Positions 24,918 through 56,776 of a stretch of DNA of 64,000 nt are shown one piece after another (positions within the stretch are counted from its first letter, which is position 1; the number at the start of each line of letters is the position of its first letter). The position numbers were made by a program, and so were the translations under genes. The notes beneath the pieces are model-generated. The model made no database searches. It saw only the letters and a list, made by a program, of their open reading frames with translations, and was not told the origin of the DNA. The stretch is taken from positions 307,676 to 371,675 of IMG/VR virus record IMGVR_UViG_3300035212_003113. The stretch is one strand, 5' to 3'.

Positions 24918-24925
24918 GGCATATT

Positions 24926-33811: not shown

Positions 33812-33900
33812 GCACTACACCTGTTTAATTAGATTGCACTGCATTGACTCTATTTTTAATATTACTGAGTGATGGAAACCCTGCTCAACAAGAGGAAAAG

Positions 33901-42951: not shown

Positions 42952-43201
42952 CCCTGAAATTTGCAAATTTTCCTAGCGTGCAATCCGCGTGCCACGCTAC
43001 CCCTCCGCCCCTATAACCCGCCAACCCCCGCCCAGGGGTTGCTTTCCTGTAAACGGCCAGGCAGCCGCCCGTAATAAAAGCGGCACAAATCTTGCCTATT
43101 ACTTTCCATTCCTTTCGGTCCTAAAGACATTCTTTCCTGATCCTGACGCGTGAGACAGGGACCCGTCCGTCAACCCCTTCCCCCTGTCTGTGAGGTAAGT
43201 C

Positions 43202-43612
43202 ATGACCACCACCATCACAGCCCGCGCCGCCTACGTTGCTACCGTAACCAAGACCGCGCTGGCGCTGGCCATCATGGCTCAAGAAGAATATCGCAAGGCG
43301 GTAGTGGAGGCGTTTGCCGCCTATGACGGCGGGCGCCCCGGCGCGGCGGCCGTCGCCGCCTTGCGGCGCGTGGCAGTCCGGCCCGCCACCGCCATTGAAA
43401 GCCGCCGCCCGGCGACGGAGACCGCCGCCCTTCTCGTGAACGCCTATGACGGCGGATACGACGCGGCGGAACGAGCCGCACGCCGTTGGGACATTGACGC
43501 CGTCGAGGGCGTCCCCTTCGCCGACCGGGTTGATGCCCGCCCATGGTTCCTTAATGTCATGCCTGATGGGACTGAGATGTGGCAGACGATTCCCGATGAC
43601 GTCGAGTTCTGA
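43202..43612 (+). CDS. cassette gene, Ala-rich hypothetical protein
   Basis: Preceded by element, leader L1 and GAGG; followed by hairpin and T-tract. Confidence 0.7.
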   Translation: MTTTITARAAYVATVTKTALALAIMAQEEYRKAVVEAFAAYDGGRPGAAAVAALRRVAVRPATAIESRRPATETAALLVNAYDGGYDAAERAARRWDIDAVEGVPFADRVDARPWFLNVMPDGTEMWQTIPDDVEF

Positions 43613-43771
43613 TGGCCGGGGCCGACCCTGCCCTGTCTGCCCCGGCTAGCCCGGGGCTTTTCTTTCACCGGGTTTCGAGCCGGGCCGGTCCTAAAAACAT
43701 TATCTTTTGATCCTGACGCGTGAGACAGGGATCAGTCCATCAACCCCTTCCCCCTGTCTGTGAGGTAAGTC

Positions 43772-44005
43772 ATGACCACCGCCGCCGTCACCACCGCCGC
43801 CCTCGCCGTCAACGCCCTCGCCGCCGCCCTCGATGCCGTCCGCGCCGCTCACGCCGCGTCACCGTCCTGCCCGGCGGCGGCCGCCGCGTTGGCGGTTACG
43901 GAGGCCGCGCTGGAACTCGCAAACCAAGGGCTCGACTCCGCCATCGGGGCGGATTCCATCGACTGGCGCCCGGGGCTTTGCGAGAGTCTCGTCGCCGGGG
44001 AATGA
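43772..44005 (+). CDS. cassette gene, Ala-rich hypothetical protein
   Basis: Preceded by element, leader L1 and GAGG. Confidence 0.7.
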   Translation: MTTAAVTTAALAVNALAAALDAVRAAHAASPSCPAAAAALAVTEAALELANQGLDSAIGADSIDWRPGLCESLVAGE

Positions 44006-44032
44006 CCCCGGCCTTCCCTCTCACCCTTCCGA

Positions 44033-44063
44033 CCCCGGCCACGCGCCGGGGTTTTTTTATTTT
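44033..44063 (+). terminator. intrinsic terminator, representative of cassette terminators
   Basis: CCCCGGC-CACGC-GCCGGGG plus T-tract; similar CCCCGGC..GCCGGGG+T hairpins near 44711, 45112, 48650, 49200. Confidence 0.8.
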
Positions 44064-44261
44064 CTGTCCGCCGTCGTCGCACGCCTATGTCACGGTCAAG
44101 GTCTAGGGCGGGGCGTCCCCGGCGCCAGCCCCGGCACGGGCCGGGGCTTTTCTTTTGCCCGGTCTCGAACCAGGCGAAATCCTAAAGACATTATCTTTTG
44201 ATCCTGTATGTCGAGACAGGGATCAGTCCATCAACCCCTTCCCCCTGTCTGTGAGGCCGTC

Positions 44262-44696
44262 ATGACCGCTTTCAATGACACGTTCCCCATCGTCGGCATG
44301 ACTGCCAAGTCCGTTGGACTCTGTAAGGACAAAGACGGCGGGGACGCCGTCCGATTCACGTTCGCGGACGGCAGCGAGTGGTTGATGCACCACTCGCGCA
44401 GCTGCTGCGAGTATGTTGGCCTCACGCAGGTCGACGGCGACCTGTGCGACCTTGTTAACTCCCCGCTCGTCATGGCGGAGTGCGCGGGCGAGATTGTCGA
44501 CGACATCGACGAGGACGGCCACTCGCTCGGAACAAGCGGTTGGACGTTCTACCGCTTCGCCACGGGGAAGGGCTACGTCACCCTGCGCTGGCAAGGCAAT
44601 AGCAACGGGTATTATTCAGTCGAGGTCTCTTTCTATCAGACGAAAGAGTCCGCGTCGATATCGTTCTATGATAACGACGACGACGACAACTACTAA
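44262..44696 (+). CDS. conserved phage hypothetical protein (CCE...WTFY...SNGYYS family)
   Basis: HHSRSCCEYV..VDGDLCDL, WTFYRFATGKGYVTLRWQGNSNGYYS; start re-called after GAGG. Confidence 0.75.
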   Translation: MTAFNDTFPIVGMTAKSVGLCKDKDGGDAVRFTFADGSEWLMHHSRSCCEYVGLTQVDGDLCDLVNSPLVMAECAGEIVDDIDEDGHSLGTSGWTFYRFATGKGYVTLRWQGNSNGYYSVEVSFYQTKESASISFYDNDDDDNY

Positions 44697-44828
44697 CCCG
44701 TAGTGAATCGCCCCGGCCCTGCCGGGGCTTTCGCTTTTCCGGGTTTCTTTCCCGGCCCCGGCCGGTCCTAAAGACATTATCTTTTGATCCTGATGCGCGG
44801 GACAATCCAGTCCCGTTTGGAGGCCGCC

Positions 44829-45089
44829 GTGACCATCCGCCGCACTGCTACCATCGTTGATGCCACCGCCGTCCGCACGGCGGTCATCGCCGCCCGTCTG
44901 CGGGCCGCCTACAGCGAGGCCGGTGACGCTGAGGCGGCCCGCATTCATCGGGGGCAGCTCGACGACGGTACGGTGGTGGTGGGGGTGCTTGACGCCCCTC
45001 CGCCCCCGCCGACGGAAGCGGAGTTGGTAGCGGAGCGCATCCGGGCGATGCGCGCCCGTATGGGTGGCGCGGCCCGCCCGCTCCGGTGA
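44829..45089 (+). CDS. cassette gene, hypothetical protein
   Basis: GTG start after GGAGG downstream of element 44764. Confidence 0.65.
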   Translation: MTIRRTATIVDATAVRTAVIAARLRAAYSEAGDAEAARIHRGQLDDGTVVVGVLDAPPPPPTEAELVAERIRAMRARMGGAARPLR

Positions 45090-45241
45090 ACCCGGCCCGC
45101 CGCTTCTCTCGCCCCGGCCCTGCCGGGGTTTTCTTTTGCCCGGTCTCGAGCCTGGCCCGTCCTAAAAACATTTCTTTTTGATCTTGTATGTCGAGACAGG
45201 GTCCAGTCCGTCAACCCCTTCCCCCTGTCTGTGAGGCAACC

Positions 45242-45604
45242 ATGAAGACCACCCGCGCCACCACCGCCGCCGTCAACGCCGCCATCGGGCGCGCCCACGC
45301 CCTCCTCTCCTTCGCCGCGCAAGCGGCTGAAGACGCCGACCTCGCCGCCACCACCGCCGCCGCCTACGGTGACGGCGGCGAAGCAGCCGCCTACGGAGCC
45401 GCCGCCGCCGCATGGGCGGCCAGCGGCGACGCCGCCGCCCGAAAGGGGGCAATCCTCGCCCCCCTCGTCGAGGGGGGGCGCATCACCCCCGCCCGCGCGG
45501 AGGAGGTGGTCAACGACCCCGCTTACTATCCCCTGGGGGACGAGGTCCTCCAAGACGAAGACGGAGTTTCCTACTCCGTCTGGGGGCACCCGGTTTACTG
45601 GTGA
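45242..45604 (+). CDS. cassette gene, Ala-rich hypothetical protein
   Basis: MKTTRATT after leader L1 and GAGG. Confidence 0.7.
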   Translation: MKTTRATTAAVNAAIGRAHALLSFAAQAAEDADLAATTAAAYGDGGEAAAYGAAAAAWAASGDAAARKGAILAPLVEGGRITPARAEEVVNDPAYYPLGDEVLQDEDGVSYSVWGHPVYW

Positions 45605-45742
45605 CCCCCGCCCCCCCGACCCCGCCCTAACCCGGCGGGGTTTCCGCTTTTCCGCTTTTCTTTCCCGGCCCCGGCCGGTCCTAAAAACATTTCTTTTTGA
45701 TCCTGTTAGATGTCAGAACAACCCGCAACACCCGGAGGCAGT

Positions 45743-45952
45743 ATGTCTAGCTATGACTGCATGTTTGAGCGCCTGAGCGCGGCTTCGGCCGCCGACAAGG
45801 CCGAGACCCCCACCGCCACCACTCCCGAGTGGCGCCTGCGGCCCACCCCGGGCCGGGACATCTGCTACTACTGCGGGACCGACAATGGCCCGCTTAGCGG
45901 GGAGTGCAGCTCCCGGCAAGGGCACGATTGCTATCACTGCGGCGGGAACTAA
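45743..45952 (+). CDS. cassette gene, small Zn-finger-like protein
   Basis: CYYCG...CSS...CYHCGG; GGAGG upstream. Confidence 0.65.
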   Translation: MSSYDCMFERLSAASAADKAETPTATTPEWRLRPTPGRDICYYCGTDNGPLSGECSSRQGHDCYHCGGN

Positions 45953-46092
45953 CTCCCGCCCATCGCCCCGCCCCGCCAGCAAGGCGGGGCCTTGCCGTTT
46001 TCTGCGTTTCTTTCCCGGCCCCGGCCGGTCCTAAAGACATTCTCTCTTGATCCTGTTAGGCGTCAGAACAACCCGCAACACCCGAGGCTCGC

Positions 46093-46425
46093 ATGGCGTT
46101 TGTGAACTTGACCCCCCACACCATCACCGTCGTCGACCAAGCGGGCGCGCCCGCGCTCGTCCTGCCCGCCGACGGGACCGTCGCCCGCGTGGCGACAAAG
46201 ACGGCCGTGGCCGCCGTCGTCGACGGCGTGGAGATTTTCGAAACCTCTTTCGGGGAGGTCGTCGGCCTCCCCGCGCCGGCCCCCGGCGTGACGTGGGTTG
46301 TCTCCGGCCTCGTCGCCGGACACCCGGCGGTGCGGGGCCGTACCGACGTCCTTTCCCCCGGGGCGCTTGTGCGCGGCCCCGATGGTCAGCCGGTTGGCTG
46401 CCGGGGCTTGAGCCGTCCCGCGTGA
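46093..46425 (+). CDS. conserved viral hypothetical protein (NLTPH family)
   Basis: NLTPHTIT...ARV...GLPAP...VVSGLVA...RTDVLSPG..VR..DG...GCRGL. Confidence 0.75.
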   Translation: MAFVNLTPHTITVVDQAGAPALVLPADGTVARVATKTAVAAVVDGVEIFETSFGEVVGLPAPAPGVTWVVSGLVAGHPAVRGRTDVLSPGALVRGPDGQPVGCRGLSRPA

Positions 46426-46539
46426 GCGGCTCCCCGGTCAATCGACCGGGCTGCCCGGCTCGTCACCCGTCCTAAAAACATTATCTTTTGATCCTGTTAG
46501 ACAGAAGCCGGAACGAAACAAACCGGCACGGAGGATACG

Positions 46540-47007
46540 ATGAAGACCCTGACGATTATGCGTGGCGTCCCCGGTAGCGGCAAGAGCACCCTTGCCAAGG
46601 TGCTCGCCAACGTCCCGGGCGTCGAGACGGCTCCCGTGTTTTCCACAGATGATTTTTTCATGGTCGATGGCGAGTACCGCTTCGACGGGTCGAAGCTCGG
46701 GGCCCACCACGCGGCCAACCTCCGCCGCACGGCGGAGGCGATGGAAGCCGGTGTTACCCACGTCATCGTGGACAACACTATGACTCAAGGATGGGAGGCG
46801 CGGGAATATGTCCGCGCCGCGACCTTCCACGGATACAGGGTGCAGTTCGTCGAGCCGCGCACGCCGTGGGGGCGGGACGCGGCGGAGTGCGCCGCCCGTA
46901 ACTCTCACGGGGTTCCCCTCGCCGCAATCGAGGGGATGCTGGCCCGGTGGGAGCCGGACCTCACCCCGGAAGCGTGCTTGAACGCCCGCGCCCCGTGGGA
47001 GGGGTGA
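46540..47007 (+). CDS. P-loop kinase, AAA_33/N4BP2-like
   Basis: MRGVPGSGKST, FSTDDFF, VIVDNT, HGVP...IEGML. Confidence 0.85.
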   Translation: MKTLTIMRGVPGSGKSTLAKVLANVPGVETAPVFSTDDFFMVDGEYRFDGSKLGAHHAANLRRTAEAMEAGVTHVIVDNTMTQGWEAREYVRAATFHGYRVQFVEPRTPWGRDAAECAARNSHGVPLAAIEGMLARWEPDLTPEACLNARAPWEG

Positions 47008-47110
47008 GAGATGCCCGGCGCCGGCCGGGCTCTTTCCCCGGCCGGTCCTAAAAACAGAAAGTTTTGATCCTGATAGGCAGAGCGGCAAACAACACGCCGC
47101 AGGAGGCAAC

Positions 47111-47425
47111 ATGCGTACCGAAACGACCCTCTCTGTTCGCATTGGAATCGTAAATGCCATGGCCCGCCGGGCCGGGGACGCGGGCCTGGCTGCCCGTGCA
47201 GATCAGGTCACGGATCTCGCCTTTGCCTTGCTCGCCATCGGCGGCGACGCCGGGCCGGTGGTGGAGGCACTGGCCAACCTCGCCGGAGAGTTGGAAACGG
47301 CGATGGTACGCCGTGGCTTCAACCGCCGCGAGATTCCGGCGGTTATCCGCCGGGACTGCGAAGCTGCCGGGCTGCCGGTGGCCGATGCCACGGTCACGGT
47401 CCGCAAGCCGGGGGTGGGGCTGTGA
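47111..47425 (+). CDS. cassette gene, hypothetical protein
   Basis: AGGAGG upstream; follows element 47044. Confidence 0.7.
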   Translation: MRTETTLSVRIGIVNAMARRAGDAGLAARADQVTDLAFALLAIGGDAGPVVEALANLAGELETAMVRRGFNRREIPAVIRRDCEAAGLPVADATVTVRKPGVGL

Positions 47426-47568
47426 AGCCGTGGAACATCCCTGACGACGAAACCGATAACCGCCCCGCCCGCATGGGCCGGGGCCGCCCGGCGGGTGAGT
47501 CGCCCCGCCCGACAAAGGGTCGTCCCCGCTCGTGGGATGCCCGCCGAAGGGAAAAGCGCCGCGACTAG
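47422..47568 (+). CDS. small Arg/Pro-rich peptide
   Basis: GTG overlapping the upstream stop; MKPWNIPDDETDN...WDARRREKRRD. Confidence 0.45.
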   Translation: MKPWNIPDDETDNRPARMGRGRPAGESPRPTKGRPRSWDARRREKRRD

Positions 47569-47650
47569 CGGACCGGGGGAGCAATCCCCCGCCCGCCTTC
47601 CGCCGGTCCTAAAAACATTCTTTTTTGATCTTGATAGGCAAGAGGTGAGT

Positions 47651-47749
47651 ATGACCCGCCGCGATGCTGCCGATGCGTTTTTCTTCCTTGCCGGTATGTT
47701 TGTTCTCGTGTTCGTCTATCCCGTCTTGTTCTACGGGATGGCGGGTTAG
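47651..47749 (+). CDS. 32-aa membrane peptide
   Basis: GAGGTG SD; MTRRDAADAFFFLAGMFVLVFVYPVLFYGMAG; has its own element (47605). Confidence 0.6.
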   Translation: MTRRDAADAFFFLAGMFVLVFVYPVLFYGMAG

Positions 47750-47825
47750 TCTCCGGGGCCGGTGCCCCCTTTCTCGCCGGTCCTAAAAACATTCTTTCCT
47801 GATCCTGTTAGTCACGGAGGCAGCG

Positions 47826-48038
47826 ATGAAAGACAAGGCTGGCAAGATGACGGTGACCTTTCCCGACGGCAGCAAGCTGACGGCCATGGCTCCGATGGGG
47901 CTCCCCGGTACGCTGGCCACGGTCGGATGGGAGGCCCACCGCGCCCGGGCGGCGATAGCCGAGATGGACATGACAAGTATTCAAAGGCTCCTGCGCCACT
48001 CCGATGCGCTGCGGGCGCTCCGGCAAGCGGGCTACTGA
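47826..48038 (+). CDS. cassette gene, hypothetical protein
   Basis: GGAGG SD after element 47779. Confidence 0.7.
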   Translation: MKDKAGKMTVTFPDGSKLTAMAPMGLPGTLATVGWEAHRARAAIAEMDMTSIQRLLRHSDALRALRQAGY

Positions 48039-48126
48039 TAAGGAATCGGGCCGGGGCTTGTCCCCGGTGCCGAGCCGGACCGGTCCTAAAAACATTCTTT
48101 TCTGATCCTAATAGGCGGAGGTCAGC

Positions 48127-48291
48127 ATGGCTCAATCGGTTCGGATTCGCATCGCTGGAAACTTCGGGCACGCGCTTTGCCTGTGCCCGGGGTGTTGTCC
48201 CCGTGGCGGCGGGGGCAAGGCGGCCGTCAAGCGCAAGACGGCGCGGGCCGTCCGGCGTTCCGAGCGCCGGGAGATCGAGACGGAGGATTAG
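48127..48291 (+). CDS. 54-aa Cys/basic peptide, missed by the ORF track
   Basis: GGAGG at 48117; MAQSVRIRIAGNFGHALCLCPGCCPRGGGGKAAVKRKTARAVRRSERREIETED. Confidence 0.65.
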   Translation: MAQSVRIRIAGNFGHALCLCPGCCPRGGGGKAAVKRKTARAVRRSERREIETED

Positions 48292-48370
48292 CCGTCCCGG
48301 CCCGGGGAGTCGCATCCCCGGTCCCGAACCTGCCCGGTCCTAAAAACATTATCTTTTGATCTTGATAAGC

Positions 48371-48628
48371 ATGAACAACAACGACAGCCTCACTGCCCGA
48401 TCCAACATCGTCGCGCTCCGGCGCGCCGACCGCGATGCGGCTGCCGCGCGCCGCGCGGGCTACGGAACTGACCGCGCCGCTTGGTGCGGCGTCGATGCCG
48501 GCCTTGCCAAGCTCATGACGGAGGCGGGCCTTTTCGCCCGCCTGCCCGCTGAGGCCCGCGAGCAGTGGGACGCCGGTTGTCTTTCCGCGTCGGAAGCTTT
48601 CGCTATCATCGGCGACGAACTATTTTAG
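48371..48628 (+). CDS. cassette gene, probably leaderless
   Basis: ATG falls exactly on the inferred +1 of element 48336; no SD. Confidence 0.65.
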   Translation: MNNNDSLTARSNIVALRRADRDAAAARRAGYGTDRAAWCGVDAGLAKLMTEAGLFARLPAEAREQWDAGCLSASEAFAIIGDELF

Positions 48629-48772
48629 TTCGCCGCCCACCCTTCCACCGCCCCGGCCCCGCCGGGGCTTTTCTTTTGCCAGGTCTCGAACCTGGCAGCG
48701 GTCCTAAAAACAGATATTTCTGATCCTGTTAGACATCGGAACGGCGGCACGGGCCGCACAACGGAGGATAGC

Positions 48773-49183
48773 ATGGCTTCGCAAAAGCGCTCTCTCGCCC
48801 TTGACATTCGTCTCGCTGGCATCGATTTCCCGTCGGACGTGGGCCGGGCGTTGGAGTTCTACGTTAACGGCAAGCTCCTGTTTCGTGGGGACCGTGCGGG
48901 ATTCGAGCGGCTCTGGGCCGCTCTCCCAAATATCCATGCCGCTTTCGGCGGGATGGAGTCTGAAGGCGTGCGCCCCTTCCGCACGGGGACCGTGCGCTTT
49001 CAGCCGGGCCGCAACCCGCAAGTCGGATACGTCTACACGTTGGAGGACGTGGCCGCCTGCATGCTGTTCCGTCATGAAGTCGAGGAAGCTCTTGACGGGC
49101 GCGGGGCGTTCCTGCCGGACGACGTGCTCGAAGATACTCACTCCTGCGCAGGGTGGGGATGTGTTTGTCACAGTGAGAGCTAG
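48773..49183 (+). CDS. cassette gene, hypothetical protein
   Basis: GGAGG SD after element 48700. Confidence 0.7.
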   Translation: MASQKRSLALDIRLAGIDFPSDVGRALEFYVNGKLLFRGDRAGFERLWAALPNIHAAFGGMESEGVRPFRTGTVRFQPGRNPQVGYVYTLEDVAACMLFRHEVEEALDGRGAFLPDDVLEDTHSCAGWGCVCHSES

Positions 49184-49339
49184 CCTCACAGCGGGCCTCG
49201 CCCGGCCCCGGCCTAATCAGCCGGGGTTTTTTTGTCTTTTTTTGCGGGCGTCATCGGTCCTAAAAACATAACTTTTTGATCCTGATAGGTGTCCAGCGGT
49301 TCCCGGCGCTCCTGCCGGCCCGCCCTGCCCGAGGTTAGC

Positions 49340-49648
49340 ATGACCAACGTCATCGGCATTATTCTCTCTACCGACTACGGCACCCTCGAAATCGAGGGGG
49401 TGGAGGCCGGCGCTCTTGCCCGCCTGCGCCGTGACCCGGTACTGGTCGCGGCCGTGGAGGCGGCCGACGACGACGCCTTTGCGGCTCGTCTCATCGACCT
49501 CCACCCGGAAGTGGCGGACTATGAGGTCCCGTCAACCGACTTCCTGCGGGTGACGCGCCTGCCCGCCGGCACCCGGTACGGGATTGTCATGGGCGACGGG
49601 GATACCGAAGCGCTCGTCTCGGAGCTTGACCTTACCGAGACGGCATGA
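49340..49648 (+). CDS. cassette gene, hypothetical protein
   Basis: GAGGT SD; MTNVIGIIL. Confidence 0.65.
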   Translation: MTNVIGIILSTDYGTLEIEGVEAGALARLRRDPVLVAAVEAADDDAFAARLIDLHPEVADYEVPSTDFLRVTRLPAGTRYGIVMGDGDTEALVSELDLTETA

Positions 49649-49743
49649 CCGTCCGGGCGGGGGCCGGGTTCACCCGGCTCCGCCCCTCTCCTCCCCGGTC
49701 CTAAAAACAGATTCTTTTGATCCTGTTAGACATGGAGGCCACG

Positions 49744-50010
49744 ATGAAGCTGACAAAGAAGGAAGCTCGCAACGTTCGCGTTCTCGCCGCGCAGCACGAC
49801 GGGTTGGACGTGCTCGCCAGTGCGGCGGGCATCGCCCGGGGCGACCGCTCGGTCGCTTACCCGGTGGAGAACCGGGGCCGGGTGGGTTGGTTCAAGCAGG
49901 TGTGCCACCTCGCCGGCCGCGAGACGGGTCGCAACCACTGGGTTGCGGCGGTGGTCCGCGCCAACCGTCCCGCTAACGCGGTGGCGATTCTCCGGGCGCT
50001 CGAAGACTAG
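49744..50010 (+). CDS. cassette gene, hypothetical protein
   Basis: GGAGG SD; an in-frame ATG at 49732 also sits on the inferred +1. Confidence 0.7.
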   Translation: MKLTKKEARNVRVLAAQHDGLDVLASAAGIARGDRSVAYPVENRGRVGWFKQVCHLAGRETGRNHWVAAVVRANRPANAVAILRALED

Positions 50011-50192
50011 CGGGTGACGGGCCGGGGCGCGTAGCCCCGGACCCGAGCCTACCGGTCCTAAAAACAGATTCTTTTGATCCTGTTAGACAGAACGGCGGCG
50101 ACGAAACGATACGATGCGCCGCACATAACGGGTTAAACGTAGCGCCGGTGGTCGGCGGTACGCTAGGCCCTAGAAACAAAAGGGAAAGCACA

Positions 50193-50705
50193 ATGTCGCT
50201 CATCAAGTTTGGTTCCAACACCGGCAACTCTGGCAACACCCTTGCTCTCCCCGCTCCCCGTGTGACGGCGCCCGCCCCTATGGCGCCGATGCCTCTCCCG
50301 GCGCCGGTCGCTGCGACGAGCACGAGCCCGGACATTGCGGCTCTTATGGCGAGGCTTGCGGCGGCCGAGGCGGGGCTCGCTACAGAGAAGGCCCGGGCCG
50401 ATGCGGCCGAGGCTGCCCGTGCGGCGAGTGGCGGTAGCCGTGGATACAGCATGAAGGCGTCGGAGAAGGGCGCTATCTCGATCTACGGCGTCTCTACCAA
50501 GTTCCCGGTGACGCTCTACGCTCCCCACCTCGTGGGAATCATCCGTGATCTGGTTATGACCGGCAAGGCGTCGGCGTTCCTCCGGGAGAATGCGGCGAAG
50601 CTTTCGGTCAAGGTCGACGGCACGGGCCAGGCGGGCACGGGTGCTTCGGAATCGGCAGTGCGCAGCCTTGCCGATGAGCTTGATCGGGTCACCCGCAAGG
50701 CGTGA
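50193..50705 (+). CDS. MSLIK paralogue 1 (coiled coil + SEKGAISIYG..FPVTLY domain)
   Basis: Near-colinear similarity to 53453..53896 and 54869..55297. Confidence 0.8.
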   Translation: MSLIKFGSNTGNSGNTLALPAPRVTAPAPMAPMPLPAPVAATSTSPDIAALMARLAAAEAGLATEKARADAAEAARAASGGSRGYSMKASEKGAISIYGVSTKFPVTLYAPHLVGIIRDLVMTGKASAFLRENAAKLSVKVDGTGQAGTGASESAVRSLADELDRVTRKA

Positions 50706-50826
50706 ACGGTAGGAAGGGGGCCGGGTTCGCCCGGCCCTTTCCTTCCCCGCCGGTCCTAAAAACAGATTCTTTTGATCCTGTTAGACAAGCGGCGACGACG
50801 AAACAAACGCCGCGAATGGAGACGCG

Positions 50827-51219
50827 ATGCGCAAGCAGTCTGCTCGTTCCCTCACCCTTGCTCTTTCCCGTGCCGCTGCTGACGTGCTTGTCGGCAAGCT
50901 GTCAAGCCTTAACTATGGGAATACCACCACGCCGGGGCCGCGTCAAACGGCCATCCTCGCAGATATTGCCCGCCGCAAGGCAACCCGGCGCGGGCGTCGG
51001 GCTGCTACTGCCGCTGAGATTGCGGAAACGCAAGGCATCCCGGTCTCCAACGTGGAGCGGGCGCTGTCCTGTCTCCGGTGCCGTGGCCTTGTCGACCGCC
51101 GGGGCACCCGGTTCGGCCTTACCATCCGGGGGACGGAAGCTGCCGCCCTGTTCTCCGGGGTGCAGGTGCCCGACGGCATCGGGCTGGTCCTGACTGGTCA
51201 TGCTATCCGCAAGGTGTGA
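50827..51219 (+). CDS. winged helix-turn-helix protein
   Basis: RQTAILADI...TAAEIAETQGIPVSNVERALSCLRCRGLV...LTIRG. Confidence 0.75.
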   Translation: MRKQSARSLTLALSRAAADVLVGKLSSLNYGNTTTPGPRQTAILADIARRKATRRGRRAATAAEIAETQGIPVSNVERALSCLRCRGLVDRRGTRFGLTIRGTEAAALFSGVQVPDGIGLVLTGHAIRKV

Positions 51220-51320
51220 CCGTCCGGGGCGGGTCGGGGGAGAAATCCCCCGGCCTTTCCTTCCGGCCCCGGTCCTAAAGACATACTTACCTGATCCTGA
51301 TAAGCACAACGGAGGCCGGT

Positions 51321-51515
51321 ATGAAAAGCAAGTTTTCTTGCCCTACTTGTAAGCAACGCCCTGCGTGTGACTGTGCACCCCCGGACTATGCCCGGATGCG
51401 CCGGGAAAGCGAGCATGCACCGTCGACTGCCGTCTATGTTGCCGCCCTGCAACGTGCATGGGAGCACCGTGCGATGATGCTCGAAGCGGACGAGACCCGC
51501 GACCACCGCGATTAG
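51321..51515 (+). CDS. small Cys-rich protein
   Basis: CPTC...CDC; GGAGG SD. Confidence 0.65.
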   Translation: MKSKFSCPTCKQRPACDCAPPDYARMRRESEHAPSTAVYVAALQRAWEHRAMMLEADETRDHRD

Positions 51516-51533
51516 CGGGTAGGAGGACTGCGC

Positions 51534-51716
51534 ATGAAAGAGCTTTTCTTTTGCATTGATCAGGAACACGTTGATGCCGGGGAGTTCCTGCCCGGCGAGA
51601 TCGGGCACTGGGCAGTGCGCGGACTCCCCGGCGGGGTGCTCGTATTCAACAACCGCTATCTAGCCGAACTGGTGTGGGCGGGTATCGCACCTCACCACGG
51701 CTACGCTCACAACTAG
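51534..51716 (+). CDS. hypothetical protein
   Basis: AGGAGG SD. Confidence 0.65.
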   Translation: MKELFFCIDQEHVDAGEFLPGEIGHWAVRGLPGGVLVFNNRYLAELVWAGIAPHHGYAHN

Positions 51717-51795
51717 GGGATCGGGGCGGACACCTGCCCCTTTCCTTCCCGGTCCTAAAAGCATACCGGGCCGATCTTGATAGCCGGGAGGCACG

Positions 51796-51987
51796 ATGGA
51801 ACGGCTCCGACAAACGCTCCGGGCGTTGTTCGCCCCGCCGCATTATCCGCCCGGCTATGCGCCGGTGTCCGGTCATGCGGTGCATTCATACGAGAAAAAC
51901 TATTTTCTGGCGGACACGCGCCGCCGTGCGAGGGTAGCCTATGAAGCCGCGAAACGCAATCTTGTTGCAGATGATCCTAACCCGTAA
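51796..51987 (+). CDS. cassette gene, hypothetical protein
   Basis: GGAGG SD after element 51751. Confidence 0.65.
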   Translation: MERLRQTLRALFAPPHYPPGYAPVSGHAVHSYEKNYFLADTRRRARVAYEAAKRNLVADDPNP

Positions 51988-52178
51988 AGGCGGGGTCATG
52001 CGCGACCGCAAGGCGGAATCGAAACGCCGGGCGTGCCGGGGGCGAGTCCGCCGGGACCGCGACGACGAGTGACCGGCTGGGGCGCCAGCCCCACCTGGCT
52101 CGCGACCGGTCCTAAAAACATACTCCTCTGATCCTGTATAGCAGAAGCCGGAACGAAACCAACTAGCAGGAGGCAGCT

Positions 52179-52472
52179 ATGTCCAAGGTTCACTTCAACA
52201 CCGGTCGTCTTTATGGTCCCCATGGTCAACGCATCGTGGCTATGCAGTGCCCTTCCGGCGAAGTTGTGTTCGTTGACCGGGACCGGGGCATCCTAGGTGC
52301 CTTGACTGAAAAGTCGGGGGAGATGGGCGCCAACACCGGAGGCGTCAAGGTGTTCCCGCCGTTGACGGCGGCGCAGGTACAGGCGGAAGTCAGTCGCCGC
52401 TATGTCGGCAGCTACGCTTATCAAAGCAGCTCACTGGCCTACCAGTTTGAGGCGCAGCTTCTCGCGGACTGA
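52179..52472 (+). CDS. cassette gene, hypothetical protein
   Basis: AGGAGG SD after element 52108. Confidence 0.7.
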   Translation: MSKVHFNTGRLYGPHGQRIVAMQCPSGEVVFVDRDRGILGALTEKSGEMGANTGGVKVFPPLTAAQVQAEVSRRYVGSYAYQSSSLAYQFEAQLLAD

Positions 52473-52556
52473 GGTCCGGCCCCGCACGCGCGGGGTTCTT
52501 TGCTGAGCCGGTCCTAAAAACAGATTCTTTTGATCTTGTTAGACACGGAGGCGACG

Positions 52557-52850
52557 ATGCGCAGCAGCGAGCAGGTTTTCGTGGCAGTCGTTTCAACCTC
52601 CCGCCACTTTGGCGGGCATGAGGAAGGCGGCTGGTGGTTCGACTGGTCGAATGTAGAAAAGGCGTGGTCTTTTGACAACCCGCGCCGGGCGCGCCGGTTT
52701 GCCCGGCGGCTGGAACGCGAGGAAGCGCATTACGCGCCGCGTCATGACCGCTTCTCGGTTCTCGGCGGGACCGATGTAGAAGTCCGCCGCACGCGGGACC
52801 CGGAAGCACTCGCCGAATGGCAGAGCCGGCAGCGCCCGCGATACGAGTGA
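52557..52850 (+). CDS. cassette gene, hypothetical protein (GGxEEGGWW motif)
   Basis: GGAGG SD; FGGHEEGGWWFD. Confidence 0.7.
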   Translation: MRSSEQVFVAVVSTSRHFGGHEEGGWWFDWSNVEKAWSFDNPRRARRFARRLEREEAHYAPRHDRFSVLGGTDVEVRRTRDPEALAEWQSRQRPRYE

Positions 52851-52945
52851 GCGGACAACGGACCGGGGCCTAGCTCCGGTCCCGAGTCCGGCCGGTCCTA
52901 AAAACATAAACTTTTGATCCTGATAGGTGCCACAACGGAGGCTGC

Positions 52946-53146
52946 ATGCAGGTGACGGAGATTGCGATTGACGGCAACGGCAACGCGACGGTGAACGCCC
53001 GCGAGGGCGGGATGGAAGCGGCGCTCGCCCGCGCCCCGTGGGCGCTGCGGGGATGGGCGGCGGAACGCTGCAATCTGGAAATGACGGGGCGGGAGTACCT
53101 GACCCGCCGCGCCGAGATGCTGCGGGCGCTGGCGGACGTCCGCTAG
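52946..53146 (+). CDS. cassette gene, hypothetical protein
   Basis: GGAGG SD after element 52894. Confidence 0.7.
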   Translation: MQVTEIAIDGNGNATVNAREGGMEAALARAPWALRGWAAERCNLEMTGREYLTRRAEMLRALADVR

Positions 53147-53452
53147 GGGACGGGGTGCCGGGGGGGCACCTGACTCCGGACCGGGCCTAAAAACATACTC
53201 CTCTGATCTTGTCCCGCATACGTGGGAGGTGTGCCATGCGGGGCTAAAAGATTGCAAAACTTATCTGCAAGGGCCAACGGCGAGTCCGGGGGCGGGCGTC
53301 CTATTGTCCGAAAAGCGCGGTCGCCACCGGTCCTAAAAACAGCTTCCCCTGATCTTGTAGGGTGTCCCGGCGACGACGCCGCGACGCAGCGCCGATGACG
53401 CAGCGCCCGATGGTCGGGGGTTGCGGATAGGCTAGAACGCAGGATACAAGCC

Positions 53453-53896
53453 ATGTCGCTTATCAAGCTCCCCGCCCCTGTCGCCGCCACCGTTGCCACG
53501 CCCGTCACGGCGCCGTCTCTGTCTCCTGACATTGCCGCGCTCATGGCCCGCCTCGCAGCGGCGGAAGCTGCGGTCGCGACGGAAAAGGCCCGCGCCGACG
53601 CCGCTGAAAAGGTCAAGGCGGAGTCGCGGGGTTATTCTGCGAAGGCATCGGAAAAGGGCGCGGTTTCCATCTACGGGGTTAGCGCCCGCTTCCCTGTCAC
53701 GCTGTATGCCCCGCACTTTGTCGGGGTGTGCCTTGACCTTATCATGACGGATAAGGGGGTCAACTTCCTGCGTGAAAACGCGGATAAGTTGTCTGTCAAG
53801 GTGGACGGCACCGGGCAGGCCGGGACGGAGGCGAGCCGGGCGGAAGTGCTGCGCCTCGCAGACCGGCTGGCCGGTGCGGTTGCCCGCCTGAAGTGA
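53453..53896 (+). CDS. MSLIK paralogue 2
   Basis: SPDIAALMARL...KASEKGAVSIYGVSARFPVTLYAPH. Confidence 0.8.
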   Translation: MSLIKLPAPVAATVATPVTAPSLSPDIAALMARLAAAEAAVATEKARADAAEKVKAESRGYSAKASEKGAVSIYGVSARFPVTLYAPHFVGVCLDLIMTDKGVNFLRENADKLSVKVDGTGQAGTEASRAEVLRLADRLAGAVARLK

Positions 53897-54868
53897 GGCG
53901 GGCCGGGGGTGGGCGGGGCGACCCGCCTGCCCCTTTTCCGGCGACCGGCGCCCGGCCGGACCCGCCGGGTTCGCCACCGGCCCTAAAAACATACTCGCCT
54001 GATCCTGTAGGACGTACTCTGGTGACAAACCGGGGCGGGCGAACTATTCCTTTTTTTATTGCCCGGCGCGGGGCAGTCCGGTCGTCGGTCCTAAAAACAT
54101 ACGCCGACGATCCTGACAGACGGGTCAACGGGACAACCGGGGGCGGGATAGGTGCGTCGATTGCAAGAAAAAACCGGGGAACAATAACAGGATCGGGAAA
54201 GCCCGTTTTTAGGACCGGGATTGCCTGCAAAGTTTATGCCCCTTTTTATTGTGCCGGTCCTAAAAACAGCTTCTCCCGATCCTGTTACGCGTCAACGCTA
54301 TAGTCGGGGGCGGGGAGAGGTGTATCCGGTGGATTAGTTATGTGGACAAAAGATCCGTTTTGTTTTTGCGTTTTATGATAGCTGACAGGGGCCGGCGGTC
54401 CTAAAGACGGAGTCCGCCGATCCTGTAACCTGCGTCAACGGGACAACCGGGGACGGGTGCGGTGTGCCTAGTGGCTTTGTAATGCTGATGCAATGTTTGC
54501 AGGATCTTTTCTATCTGTTATTAGGATTGCGGCTTCAGTCCTAAAGACGGTGTTGTGTGATCCTGTTGTGCTTTTACTGATTCTGGCTTTCCCTAACGGT
54601 AGAGAGCTGGGAGATAACTTTATAATCTTTAGCAGGCCGCCCGGGCTTGCTGGATAGCTATTGTCTCGCGCGCGTTGATAGGGATGCTTGGTAGGTTGCT
54701 AGATAGTACCTGCTAGAAAGCAGTTTTTCTTGACAGGGGGCGGCGGTCCTAAAGTCGGGGTCCGCCGATCCTGTAGAGCAGAACGGCGGCCCACTACATA
54801 GCCGCAAAGGTGAAGCGTTATACCCGGTGGTCGGGTATCTCGTGGAGCCTAAATACAGGGAGAGCATC

Positions 54869-55297
54869 ATGTCGCTCATCAAGGTCGGAACCCCCGTCGC
54901 CAACAACACCGTCACCTCTGTCAGCCCGGATGTGGCAGCTCTCATGGAGCGTCTCAAGGCTGCCGAGGCTGCGCTGGCAGCAGAGAAGGCCCGTGCCGAT
55001 GCTGCTACCAAGACTAAGGGCGAGGCGCGTGGTTACACCGCCAAGGCCAGCGAGAAGGGTGCTATCAGCATCTACGGTGTGTCCGCTCGCTTTCCTGTCA
55101 CGGTCTACGCTCCCCACTTTGTGGGGATTGCGCTGGACCTCATCATGACCGACAAGGGAGTGGCGTTTCTCCGGGAGAACGCTGATAAGCTCTCTGTCAA
55201 GGTGGATGGTACCGGGACCGCTGGTACCGAGGCTAGCCGTGCCGAGGTTCTCCGGCTGGCTGACCGTCTCGCTGAAGCTGTCGCCAAGCTGAAGTGA
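54869..55297 (+). CDS. MSLIK paralogue 3
   Basis: SPDVAALMERL...KASEKGAISIYGVSARFPVTVYAPH; start re-called. Confidence 0.8.
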   Translation: MSLIKVGTPVANNTVTSVSPDVAALMERLKAAEAALAAEKARADAATKTKGEARGYTAKASEKGAISIYGVSARFPVTVYAPHFVGIALDLIMTDKGVAFLRENADKLSVKVDGTGTAGTEASRAEVLRLADRLAEAVAKLK

Positions 55298-55658
55298 GGC
55301 AGGCAGGTGGGGGCCGGGATAACCCGGCTCCCTTTCCTGTTAGAATGACAGCTTACCCCTACACAGGTGGCAATAATGCTGCGCTTTTTGGAACTTCCTC
55401 CTAGCCGTCCTGACGTCGAGCCTACGTGGACGGAGTGTATTGCGATGGCCTTTCAATGTGCCCGCTTTGCGCCGCTCGAAGCGGACAGGGCACGGGCCAT
55501 GCATGCTGCCTGTAGCTGGTTAGAAAAAGGCTTGTTTTGGCTTGATTGAAGCCACTACCGGGGAGGGGCGACTCTCCCCGGTACCTACAACCTGCAACAC
55601 ACCTGCCAACGGGACAACCGGGGGCGGGCGATCTATTCGCGCGCGCGTTGTGTGCTCC

Positions 55659-56025
55659 GGTCCTAAAAACAGCGATTTCTGATCCTGATACAGTTGCCCC
55701 TCTGTCAGGCAGAGGATTGCAGCGTTCCGGTCCTAAAGACGGGTGTTGCTGATCCTGTAGGGGTTTGCCGATTGCCTGCAATCCTCTGCCCTTGCTCCGT
55801 CCTAAAGACGGGGATCTGTGATCCTGTATCGGTTTGACCTGTGTGTGTCTATATACTTGTTTCTATGTGAAACGCGCCGGTCCTAAAAACAGATTCTTTT
55901 GATCCTGTCGCCCTTTGTCTTTTTGTCAACTTCACGCGGTCCTAAAAACATACTCGCCTGATCCTGTTAGCATTTTCTTTTTTCTAGACTCGCTCCAGTC
56001 CTAAAGACGGTGTGCCCTGATCCTG
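55659..56025 (+). repeat. ORF-free cluster of six 29-bp elements with 30-52-bp gaps
   Basis: Starts 55659, 55729, 55798, 55879, 55938, 55997; gaps 41, 40, 52, 30, 30. Confidence 0.9.
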
Positions 56026-56281
56026 TCCCGGTTGCCCCGCTGTTTGCTTCTTCTCTCTTTTTCTTGTGCCTAGAGCGGCTGGCCTATTGCCGGCAGACAA
56101 CCGCTTTGCAGCGTTTACCCGTCTGAAGAATAATGGGCAAAAGATACCAAGGGAACCGCCACCACCCACCGGGAGCTAAAACCTCTCTTGATGCCGGTAT
56201 TACAGCTGTACTAAGTATTAGACAGCTGCTAGTTGACCCGCGCCGGCTCTAAAGCCGGGTATGCCGCTGTATGGAGTTGTC

Positions 56282-56776
56282 ATGAAACTTGACAAAGTCG
56301 CGCTGTCTTATGCAAGATCCAGCGAAGAAGCTATATCTATACTAACAGAGAGCAGACCAGAGTTTGTCCCGCTGCTGCATCCTGATGATTTGCGTAAGAT
56401 AACAAAATATATTGTTGCCTGCAATAACCATAATCATAAAGTCTTCAAGGTTACTATACCCCTGTTTGCTTGGTACGAGCATAGGATATGGCCAGATCCT
56501 TCTGCCTTTCCTAGCAGCACAGGAATCATTTACTCTATCATGGTGTGGGTAAAGTCTCCAAAAAGAGTTCTGAAAAAGAACTTCACTCTTTTGTATCCAT
56601 TTGATCTGGGTTCTAATGCCGCATTAGACAGGGAAAGCATAAAGGAAATAATCCGATTGAAGGTAGAGAAAATAGAGAGTATGAAGGTTAGCTATAAGGC
56701 TGCCGCTGATAAGCTAAAGAATATGGCAATCGTGACAATCGGGGCCGGGCCTAAAGTCGGGTCCGGCCGATCCTGA
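56282..56776 (+). CDS. MKL-signature protein inside the cassette array
   Basis: MKLDKVAL after GGAG; stop codon lies at the right end of element 56747. Confidence 0.65.
   Translation: MKLDKVALSYARSSEEAISILTESRPEFVPLLHPDDLRKITKYIVACNNHNHKVFKVTIPLFAWYEHRIWPDPSAFPSSTGIIYSIMVWVKSPKRVLKKNFTLLYPFDLGSNAALDRESIKEIIRLKVEKIESMKVSYKAAADKLKNMAIVTIGAGPKVGSGRS

What the first reader, a model, noticed from the sequence alone, without database searches (positions are those of the whole stretch)
50089..55297. Triplicated MSLIK gene whose three long leaders share a hairpin with compensatory stems
Seen: three paralogues (50193, 53453, 54869) share an Ala-rich coiled coil and a KASEKGA[IV]SIYGVS.[KR]FPVT[LV]YAPH domain. 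Their leaders are about 90-105 nt, longer than in most cassettes. About 35 nt before the ATG each has a hairpin with loop (G/A)UGGU and a different but paired stem: CGCCG/CGGCG (50143-50157), CCCG/CGGG (53406-53418), ATACCCG/CGGGTAT (54820-54838). Two paralogues directly flank the non-coding cluster. Inference: a conserved RNA operator, possibly autoregulatory. The SEKG..S.YG..RFPVTLY domain recalls small PC4/PUR-like nucleic-acid-binding folds (from memory, unverified). The loop resembles but does not equal the CsrA ANGGA site.
Basis: partly seen in the sequence, partly recalled or inferred. Interest (0 to 1): 0.65.

Follow-up and report, generated by a model that had tools for sequence, protein, structure and literature searches.

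The report
Conserved leader hairpin of phage paralogues
Four copies of an uncharacterised small basic protein gene in a 372-kb jumbo phage each carry an unusually long mRNA leader with an evolutionarily maintained stem-loop (loop RUGGU), most likely a gene-specific regulatory RNA, possibly bound by the protein itself.

Summary
The window is the last 64 kb of a 371,675-bp jumbo-phage record. The three paralogues are real (67-75% identity), and a fourth lies outside the window. All four sit behind a phage promoter-like box with leaders of 95-110 nt, against a median of about 37 nt for 58 cassettes.

Each leader has a hairpin about 38 nt before the AUG. In 24 distinct leaders (own and metagenomic relatives), a 12-bp helix is 81% paired, against 34-42% when slid, and 11 of 12 pairs show double changes. 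G·U pairs make it strand-specific, so it acts as RNA. The loop is RUGGU in 23 of 24.

A covariance model finds only these four sites in the genome, and only paralogue leaders in 104 kb of related contigs. An untrained, more divergent orthologue also has the hairpin.

The protein has no Pfam, PHROG, NCBIfam or PDB sequence match. It belongs to a very large unannotated family (5,504 representatives), is basic, and is predicted to form a homodimer. Its core resembles PC4/Pur-alpha folds only weakly (Z 3.7).

Autoregulation is plausible but untested. I rate this a new member of a known kind (phage 5'-UTR operator hairpins), of moderate interest.

The parts
50054..50082 (+). Promoter-like box of copy A (GTCCTAAAAAC-N10-GATCCTG)
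   Evidence: One of about 75 co-oriented copies of this motif in the genome, each in front of a gene. The transcription start is not mapped.
50095..50122 (+). 5'-proximal hairpin HP1 of leader A (GGCGGC...GCCGC); approximate limits
   Evidence: Minimum-free-energy fold. A similar 5' hairpin is also present in an unrelated cassette at 48739, so it is not specific to this gene family.
50130..50170 (+). Leader hairpin HP2 of copy A; core 50143-50157, loop GUGGU 50148-50152
   Evidence: covariance-model hit at genome 357810-357840, 31.3 bits.
50193..50705 (+). Paralogue A, 170 aa, pI 9.8
50723..50747 (+). Terminator-like hairpin and T-rich tail after copy A
53329..53357 (+). Promoter-like box of copy B
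53391..53432 (+). Leader hairpin HP2 of copy B; core 53406-53418, loop AUGGU 53410-53414; extended stem 53399-53425
   Evidence: 36.7 bits.
53453..53896 (+). Paralogue B, 147 aa, pI 9.3. Modelled structure: helix 25-55, core strand-strand-strand-helix-helix 62-108, beta-hairpin 115-122, helix 126-146
   Evidence: predicted homodimer.
54745..54773 (+). Promoter-like box of copy C
54808..54850 (+). Leader hairpin HP2 of copy C; core 54820-54838, loop GUGGU 54827-54831
   Evidence: 33.7 bits.
54869..55297 (+). Paralogue C, 142 aa, pI 9.4
55309..55342 (+). Terminator-like hairpin and T-rich tail after copy C

Best explanation
Each of the four paralogous genes is a single-gene unit: a phage promoter-like box, a leader of about 100 nt, the gene, and a terminator-like hairpin.

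The leader RNA has three parts. First comes a generic 5' hairpin. Second comes a family-specific irregular stem-loop (HP2) whose tip is R-UGG-U. Third comes a purine-rich, mostly unpaired stretch of about 30 nt that carries the ribosome-binding site.

HP2 is a cis-regulatory RNA maintained by selection; this part is shown. I infer that it is an operator read at its conserved tip by a trans-acting factor. The most likely factor is the family's own basic, dimeric, PC4-like-shaped protein. Binding at HP2 would then extend over, or bend onto, the adjacent single-stranded purine-rich ribosome-binding site and lower translation. Because the loop is the same in all four leaders, the four paralogues would be under one common dosage feedback.

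The layout (a structured nucleation site upstream plus an unstructured ribosome-binding site) works like the T4 gene 32 operator. Hairpin-tip recognition by a dimer works like the MS2/PP7 coat-protein operators.
For: Shown:
- Helix covariation. The 12-bp helix is 81% paired, against 34-42% for slid partners. Eleven of 12 pairs have double changes, and 0 of 500 shuffles reach the observed values.
- RNAalifold on whole leaders returns only this hairpin.
- 28 of 252 helix cells are G·U, and covariance-model hits occur only on the + strand. This argues for RNA, not duplex DNA.
- The loop is RUGGU in 23 of 24 leaders across four orthogroups whose stems differ completely.
- Exclusivity. The model finds only the 4 leaders in 371 kb at E<=10, and only paralogue leaders in 104 kb of relatives' contigs.
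- An orthologue not used for training (L277) has the hairpin 38 nt before its ATG.
- The leaders are about 2.5-3 times the median cassette leader.
- The ribosome-binding-site region is 70% purine, and its predicted unpaired probability is 0.52-0.81, against 0.34-0.50 for the rest of the leader.

Supporting the inference about the protein:
- pI is 9.3-9.8.
- A homodimer is predicted with ipSAE 0.79 against a best control of 0.01; 21 of 30 solved homodimers and 0 of 23 solved monomers reach the mark.
- The invariant residues K64, S66, E67, S72 and T83 lie in the beta-strands but outside the predicted dimer interface. They are therefore on the exposed sheet face, which PC4-like domains use for nucleic acids (PMC7549692).
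- The best fold matches are PC4 and Pur-alpha type single-strand binders.
Against: - No binding or expression data.
- The hairpin ends well upstream of the Shine-Dalgarno sequence (its core 3' end is about 35 nt before the ATG). A single bound dimer would therefore not obviously block the ribosome.
- The fold similarity is weak (Z 3.7, below the tool's own caution level of 8). Foldseek finds nothing.
- One orthologue (L165:4783) keeps a perfect 10-bp stem but has the loop AUUCC. The loop sequence is therefore dispensable there.
- 140 distant short-form homologues in other phages lack any such hairpin, so binding to this RNA is not a family-wide trait.
- A conserved loop in four diverged paralogues fits a shared foreign factor (host or another phage protein) as well as it fits the proteins themselves.
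Confidence: 0.4

Rival explanations
1. HP2 is a processing or stability element. It would be an irregular helix of about 14-20 bp that is cut by, or protects against, a host or phage ribonuclease (RNase III-type site or decay barrier). It would set the mRNA half-life or activate translation, with no involvement of the encoded protein.
For: Minimum-free-energy folds extend the hairpin with outer helices and internal loops to about 14-17 bp, like T7 RNase III sites (established knowledge). The stem is maintained even where the loop changed (L165:4783).
Against: The loop sequence is kept in 23 of 24 leaders while the stems turn over, which a pure duplex signal does not need. The element is absent from the other roughly 70 cassettes of the same phage. 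A separate 5'-terminal hairpin, HP1, already fits the stabiliser role.
Confidence: 0.2
2. HP2 is an operator for a different trans factor, not for the paralogues themselves. Candidates are another phage early or middle protein, a host RNA-binding protein, or the ribosome (a standby or enhancer site).
For: The same loop is kept in four paralogues that have diverged to 67-82% identity. The hairpin does not overlap the ribosome-binding site.
Against: There is strict co-occurrence with this one gene family, in this genome and in its relatives. No candidate partner emerged. There is no above-chance complementarity to the neighbouring non-coding transcripts: the longest match is 9 nt, against 8.3-8.5 nt on average in shuffles.
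Confidence: 0.2
3. The conserved RUG in the loop is a start codon, for either a short upstream ORF or an N-terminally extended isoform, and the 'loop conservation' is really coding or initiation conservation.
For: The loop begins with AUG or GUG in 23 of 24 leaders. In the window, the loop GUG of copies A and C is in frame and open to the main ORF (185-aa and 156-aa ORFs). Copy B gives a 6-codon upstream ORF and the fourth copy (D) a 4-codon one.
Against: The frame and length are not conserved among orthologues. L090 is out of frame, L183 and L175 stop after 3 to 8 codons, and L165 has no start codon in the loop. Leader lengths differ by non-multiples of three. No Shine-Dalgarno sequence precedes the loop, and the codon sits in a 3-5-nt loop closed by G-C pairs.
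Confidence: 0.05
4. The element acts at the DNA level, as a palindromic operator or cruciform for a DNA-binding protein or for a recombination or replication function.
For: It is an inverted repeat. The paralogues flank a cluster of promoter-like repeats.
Against: The half-site sequence is not conserved; only complementarity is. 11% of helix cells are G·U, which would be A·C mismatches on the other strand. Covariance-model hits occur on the + strand only.
Confidence: 0.03

Closest known systems
T4 gene 32 translational operator (autogenous control by the single-strand-binding protein; established knowledge)
   Same: A structured nucleation element well upstream in the gene's own leader, followed by an unstructured region that contains the ribosome-binding site. 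A basic protein with a plausible single-strand-binding fold. Dosage feedback is the inferred logic.
   Different: In T4 the element is a pseudoknot and the spacer is AU-rich; here it is a hairpin with a UGG tip and a purine-rich spacer. The protein is unrelated to gp32 (OB fold). Four paralogues share one operator type. Binding is untested.
MS2 / PP7 coat-protein operator hairpins (classed with PC4-like domains in PMC7549692)
   Same: A symmetric protein dimer with a beta-sheet face reads the tip of a short RNA hairpin. Stems covary while loop bases are fixed. The outcome is translational repression.
   Different: The MS2 and PP7 hairpins contain the start codon or ribosome-binding site of the repressed gene and have a bulged A. 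HP2 ends about 35 nt before the AUG and regulates (if it does) its own gene. There is no sequence or significant fold match to coat proteins.
PC4 / Sub1 / Pur-alpha / YdbC / phage T5 PC4-like proteins (PC4-like fold family)
   Same: A small sheet-plus-helix unit that is predicted to dimerise, is basic, and has PC4 6ycs_A as its top structural match, with 12 family members among 40 rows.
   Different: The similarity is weak: Z is only 2.0-3.7. There are three strands before the helix instead of four. There is no Pfam PC4 or PurA signal. An N-terminal coiled-coil-like helix and a C-terminal beta-hairpin plus helix are added.
Lambda N / nutL boxB (leader hairpin that mediates antitermination and N autoregulation; established knowledge)
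   Same: A stem of 5-7 bp with a five-base loop in the leader of an early phage gene, far upstream of the start codon, read by a phage protein.
   Different: The loop RUGGU is not the GNRA-like GAAAA/GAAGA pentaloop. No boxA is seen in the leaders. The protein is not an arginine-rich peptide. Each unit has its own promoter and terminator.

Membership tests
PC4-like fold family (PC4, Sub1, Pur-alpha, Whirly, YdbC, T5 PC4 homologue) | Repeat topology: four antiparallel strands followed by a helix (PMC7549692) | tested here: inconclusive
   AlphaFold2 models (pLDDT 81.5) give strand-strand-strand-helix-helix, then a beta-hairpin and a helix. That is three strands before the helix, not four. VIA-align best match is PC4 6ycs_A: Z 3.7, rmsd 3.3, 48 residues aligned. 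Foldseek finds nothing at E<=0.001.
PC4-like fold family | Two repeats pair (within one chain or as a homodimer) to build the functional domain | tested here: met
   Prediction only. Homodimer ipSAE is 0.79 against a best control of 0.01. 21 of 30 solved homodimers and 0 of 23 solved monomers reach the mark. Runs agree in at least 88% of contacts, and the partner's pLDDT is 80. The interface runs through residues 59-146, with helix 86-98 on the symmetry axis.
PC4-like fold family | Sequence membership in Pfam PC4 (PF02229) or PurA (PF04845) | tested here: not met
   There is no match in the whole genome at E<=10. Neither family appears in hmmscan of the proteins at E<=1.
PC4-like fold family | Binds single-stranded DNA or RNA on the sheet face | not testable with these tools
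   Only indirect evidence: pI 9.3-9.8, and invariant K64, S66, E67, S72 and T83 lie on the exposed strand positions.
Autogenous translational operators of phages (T4 gp32, gp43, RegA; MS2 coat) | Conserved structured RNA element in the leader of the regulated gene | tested here: met
   Covariation, independent RNAalifold prediction, and covariance-model exclusivity.
Autogenous translational operators of phages | The element overlaps or adjoins the ribosome-binding site, so that binding excludes the ribosome | tested here: inconclusive
   The core hairpin ends about 35 nt before the AUG and does not pair with the Shine-Dalgarno region. Occlusion would need spreading over the unpaired purine-rich spacer, as with gp32.
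Autogenous translational operators of phages | The gene product binds its own leader and represses translation | not testable with these tools
   No protein-RNA docking tool is available.
CsrA/RsmA binding hairpins | GGA (ANGGA) presented in the hairpin loop | tested here: not met
   The loops are RUGGU (23 of 24) or AUUCC; none contains GGA.
Any curated Rfam family | Score at or above the gathering threshold | tested here: not met
   There are 0 matches in the window at gathering thresholds. In 50000-56300 at E<=1 the only match is a sub-threshold PrrB/RsmZ hit, which lies elsewhere, at 50615-50744.
Lambdoid nut boxB hairpins | GNRA-like pentaloop (GAAAA/GAAGA) with boxA upstream | tested here: not met
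   The loop is RUGGU, and no boxA-like sequence was seen on reading the 24 leaders.
RNase III processing sites (T7 type) | Irregular duplex of about two helical turns | tested here: inconclusive
   Minimum-free-energy folds give about 14-17 bp in three helical segments with internal loops. Cleavage cannot be tested here.

The most novel reading that the evidence does not exclude
The SEKG...FPVTLY domain would define a very large, unannotated family of dimeric PC4-like binders of single-stranded RNA or hairpins. The family has 5,504 representatives at 50% identity. Its members are stand-alone chromosomal genes in Acidobacteriaceae, Myxococcota and Bdellovibrionota, and genes in hundreds of phages. 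In this jumbo-phage lineage the family expanded to four paralogues held under one shared translational feedback through a new UGG-tipped operator hairpin. That would give the first handle on the ligand and function of the whole family.
Probability: 0.2. Interest if true: 0.7.

Novelty: new member of a known kind. Interest (0 to 1): 0.5.

Why it matters
It would add a defined, testable cis-regulatory RNA from a jumbo phage; no curated Rfam family matches this one. It would also link that RNA to a protein family that none of the scanned libraries (Pfam, PHROGs, NCBIfam) covers, although the family has thousands of members in soil and freshwater bacteria and in phages.

The hairpin offers a ready-made candidate ligand for working out what the family binds.

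Four paralogues sharing one operator would be a simple natural case of collective dosage control.

Tried and rejected
- Family scans. Pfam, PHROGs and NCBIfam scans of the paralogues, and of six short-form relatives, gave nothing above noise.
- Solved structures. A PDB sequence-profile search gave nothing.
- Fold searches. Foldseek against the PDB with the full model and with the domain model, Foldseek against BFVD, and the ESM Atlas by features and by shape gave no significant or named match, only 'hypothetical protein' virus clusters.
- GenBank phages. Only two uncultured records, at 38% identity.
- First viral-contig scan. It failed because low-complexity patterns were chosen. The repeat with a broader alignment found only distant short forms.
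- Hairpin in distant homologues. 4 of 140 upstream regions have an RTGGT hairpin with a stem of at least 3 bp, which is chance level. Acidobacterial orthologues show a promoter-like TAGACT box instead.
- Gene neighbourhood of bacterial homologues. It is not conserved.
- Domain fusions among longer family members. None was informative.
- Antisense pairing between the leaders and the adjacent non-coding cluster. It is at chance level (the first script timed out).
- Upstream ORF or extended isoform from the loop RUG. Not conserved.
- Sigma-70 promoters in front of the genes. None.
- One paper search was rejected for a formatting slip.


Full report
CONTEXT

The window is bases 307676-371675 of a 371,675-bp IMG/VR virus record. 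A 127-bp terminal overlap indicates a circularly assembled jumbo phage. The window encodes a tubulin/TubZ-like protein, UvsW-like and DnaB-like helicases and a ribonucleotide reductase.

A two-box motif, GNCCTAAARNC followed about 10-11 nt later by GATCCTG, occurs about 75 times. Nearly all copies are on the + strand, running from about 350 kb through the record ends to 123 kb, and each lies shortly before a gene. I read it as the promoter of one transcription class. The start sites are not mapped.

Between window positions 44 and 54 kb the G+C content is 65%, against about 49% elsewhere. There the genome is a dense array of units, each with a promoter, a small gene and a terminator-like hairpin.

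THE OBSERVATION

The three genes at 50193, 53453 and 54869 are paralogues, 67-75% identical. A search of the whole genome found a fourth at genome 12024-12437, outside the window.

The three hairpins are at the stated coordinates. The fourth copy has CCCCTA/ATGGT/TAGGGG 39 nt before its ATG. It keeps the same loop, but both inner base pairs are exchanged.

Measured from the GATCCTG box, the four leaders are 95-110 nt. The median over 58 cassettes is 37.5 nt and the 90th percentile is 99 nt.

IS THE HAIRPIN SELECTED?

The word-index protein search found about 80 close homologues (at least 56% identity), all metagenomic. From these and one metagenome scan I fetched contigs. These yielded 24 non-identical leaders that fall into the same four orthogroups, A to D.

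Anchored on the loop, the leaders align without gaps. For a 12-bp helix:
- 81% of cells are standard pairs, against 34-42% when the 3' partner is slid by 1-3 columns.
- 11 of 12 pairs show changes on both sides.
- The covariation score is 0.58, against 0.25 +/- 0.03 in shuffles, and 0 of 500 shuffles reach it.

Several exchanges arose more than once. For example, C-G to U-A at the second pair occurs both in group D and in one group-C leader.

Eleven per cent of cells (28 of 252) are G·U pairs, which would be mismatches on the other strand.

RNAalifold run on the complete leaders returns this hairpin as the only consensus structure. It additionally pairs the first and last loop bases (A-U or G·U), leaving a UGG triloop.

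The loop is RUGGU in 23 of 24 leaders. One group-C orthologue has AUUCC on a perfect 10-bp stem, and one group-B orthologue has GUGGUU.

IS IT SPECIFIC TO THE FAMILY?

A covariance model of the 31-nt core finds exactly the four leaders in the 371-kb genome at E<=10, all on the + strand. In 104 kb of related contigs it finds only the leaders of paralogues. That set includes a weak hit in L277, the most divergent orthologue, which was not used for training. L277 has ACCCCG/GTGGT/CGGGTT 38 nt before its ATG.

Distant short-form homologues in other phages do not have the hairpin.

REST OF THE LEADER

Minimum-free-energy folds give a 5'-proximal hairpin (HP1), the family hairpin HP2 extended by outer helices, and an unpaired tail.

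HP1-like sequence also occurs in an unrelated cassette. I therefore take HP1 to be generic.

The last 30 nt before the AUG are 39% A and 31% G. Other cassettes have 28% A and 28% G. The predicted unpaired probability of the last 25 nt is 0.52-0.81, against 0.34-0.50 upstream.

THE PROTEIN

There is no match in Pfam, PHROGs or NCBIfam, and none to PDB sequences.

The profile search of 1.84 billion representatives gives 5,504 proteins at E<=0.001 and 4,061 at E<=1e-10. Most are 80-220 aa.

The common form is about 80-110 aa: a heptad-like helix followed by the block KVSEKGAVS.YG..RFPVTLY and two helices. It occurs in 165 IMG/VR loci and in 559 places in bacterial genomes. Among the 80 loci listed, these are mostly Acidobacteriaceae and other Terriglobia, Myxococcota and Bdellovibrionota. 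In bacteria it is a stand-alone gene without conserved neighbours.

Longer members carry no informative fused domain.

The phage paralogues are a long form. They have an extra N-terminal tail and a C-terminal beta-hairpin plus helix.

AlphaFold2 models are confident, with a mean pLDDT of 81.5.

Foldseek finds no significant match. The exhaustive VIA-align search with the core domain returns only 48 chains with Z>=2 out of 48,161. The best is the PC4 DNA-binding domain (6ycs_A: Z 3.7, rmsd 3.3, 48 of 66 residues aligned). Twelve of the 40 listed rows are PC4, Sub1, Pur-alpha, MRP1/2, YdbC, BPSL1147 or the phage T5 PC4 homologue. Each Z value is below the level the tool regards as safe, so this is a coherent lead and not a demonstration.

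The Pfam PC4 and PurA models do not match the genome.

The proteins are basic, with pI 9.3-9.8.

A homodimer is predicted with ipSAE 0.79, against a best control of 0.01. In the tool's calibration, 21 of 30 solved homodimers and 0 of 23 solved monomers reach the mark. The runs agree in at least 88% of contacts, and the partner's pLDDT is 80.

The predicted interface uses alternate strand residues and helix 86-98. The invariant residues K64, S66, E67, S72 and T83 are not in the interface, so they should line the exposed sheet face. According to the review PMC7549692, PC4-like domains are sheet-plus-helix repeats that pair into a two-repeat domain and bind nucleic acids on the sheet. That review also places the hairpin-binding MS2 and PP7 coat proteins in this class.

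MECHANISM

Shown: there is a strand-specific, family-exclusive, evolutionarily maintained stem-loop with a fixed tip, in an unusually long leader, followed by an open purine-rich ribosome-binding region.

Inferred: the tip is read by a trans factor. The strict co-occurrence with one gene family makes the family's own protein the most economical candidate. Because all four leaders show the same tip, the four proteins would cross-regulate, giving a shared dosage feedback.

Because the hairpin does not touch the Shine-Dalgarno sequence, repression would need spreading or bridging over the single-stranded spacer, as in the T4 gene 32 operator (established knowledge).

I put 0.9 on 'selected RNA structure' and about 0.4 on 'operator for its own protein'.

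The rivals, with their tests, are given in their own section. They are a processing or stability element, an operator for another factor, a start codon in the loop, and a DNA-level site.

The start-codon idea deserves mention. The loop begins with AUG or GUG, and in copies A and C of the window it is in frame with the gene. However, frame, length and even the presence of the codon are not conserved among orthologues.

NOVELTY AND SCORE

No Rfam family matches, and the protein family is unannotated in every library scanned. The kind of system, a leader hairpin operator of a phage gene, is well known.

I therefore file this as a new member of a known kind, with interest 0.5. The RNA is a solid and directly testable candidate. 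The larger prize would be a first ligand for a very large orphan protein family.

NOT DONE

Noticed in passing
whole genome; window 43118-63760: A two-box promoter-like motif occurs about 75 times, nearly all on the + strand. It has two spacer classes. In the GC-rich island the spacer is AT-rich (AAAACAnnnTCTTTTGATCCTGTTAGAC). Elsewhere it is GC-rich (AAAGCCGGnnnCnCCCGATCCTGAAGGnCGA).
   Followed up: partly
window 44000-54000: An island of 65% G+C in a genome of about 49% G+C. It is packed with small-gene units, each with a promoter and a terminator.
   Followed up: no
window 53980-54745 and 55660-56030: Promoter-like elements with no ORF behind them. Six stand in tandem at 59-81 bp spacing (55660 to 55998). 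A box CAACGGGACAACCGGGG(G/A)CGGG recurs near 54127, 54437 and 55604, with variants near 53278, 54017 and 54294. One promoter element lies on the minus strand (54215-54180), convergent with the one at 54088.
   Followed up: partly
window 43118-45215: Four cassettes (promoters at 43118, 43688, 44179 and 45159) share a leader of about 55 nt with a hairpin GACAGGG-N21-CCCTGTC before the Shine-Dalgarno sequence. The proteins behind them are unrelated, so this leader module is shared by non-homologous genes.
   Followed up: partly
window 10182-11528: A tubulin/FtsZ-TubZ-like gene. Nearby lie a UvsW-like helicase (12061-13533), a DnaB-like helicase (15963-17513) and a ribonucleotide reductase (24911-26620). 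A 2397-aa ORF at 33844-41037 was not examined.
   Followed up: no
window 50615-50744: A sub-threshold Rfam match to PrrB/RsmZ (22.8 bits against a gathering score of 44, E 0.038). It overlaps the 3' end of paralogue A and its terminator. It is probably chance.
   Followed up: no
L201-L273 (bacterial genome contigs): Short-form homologues of about 80 aa are stand-alone chromosomal genes in many Acidobacteriaceae, Myxococcota and Bdellovibrionota. A conserved TCTAGACTG box, perhaps a -10 region, lies about 40 nt upstream in the Acidobacteriaceae.
   Followed up: partly
L167:5191-5727, L168:3949-4485: In related phage contigs the D-type paralogue lies about 2 kb upstream of an ArdA anti-restriction gene (PF07275), which fits an early-gene region. 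The C-type paralogue is followed by a DUF1281_C gene in L175, L183, L190 and L277.
   Followed up: no
P0122, P0123, P0193: Some family members of about 216-221 aa contain two or three tandem copies of the domain. This would be an intramolecular version of the predicted dimer.
   Followed up: no
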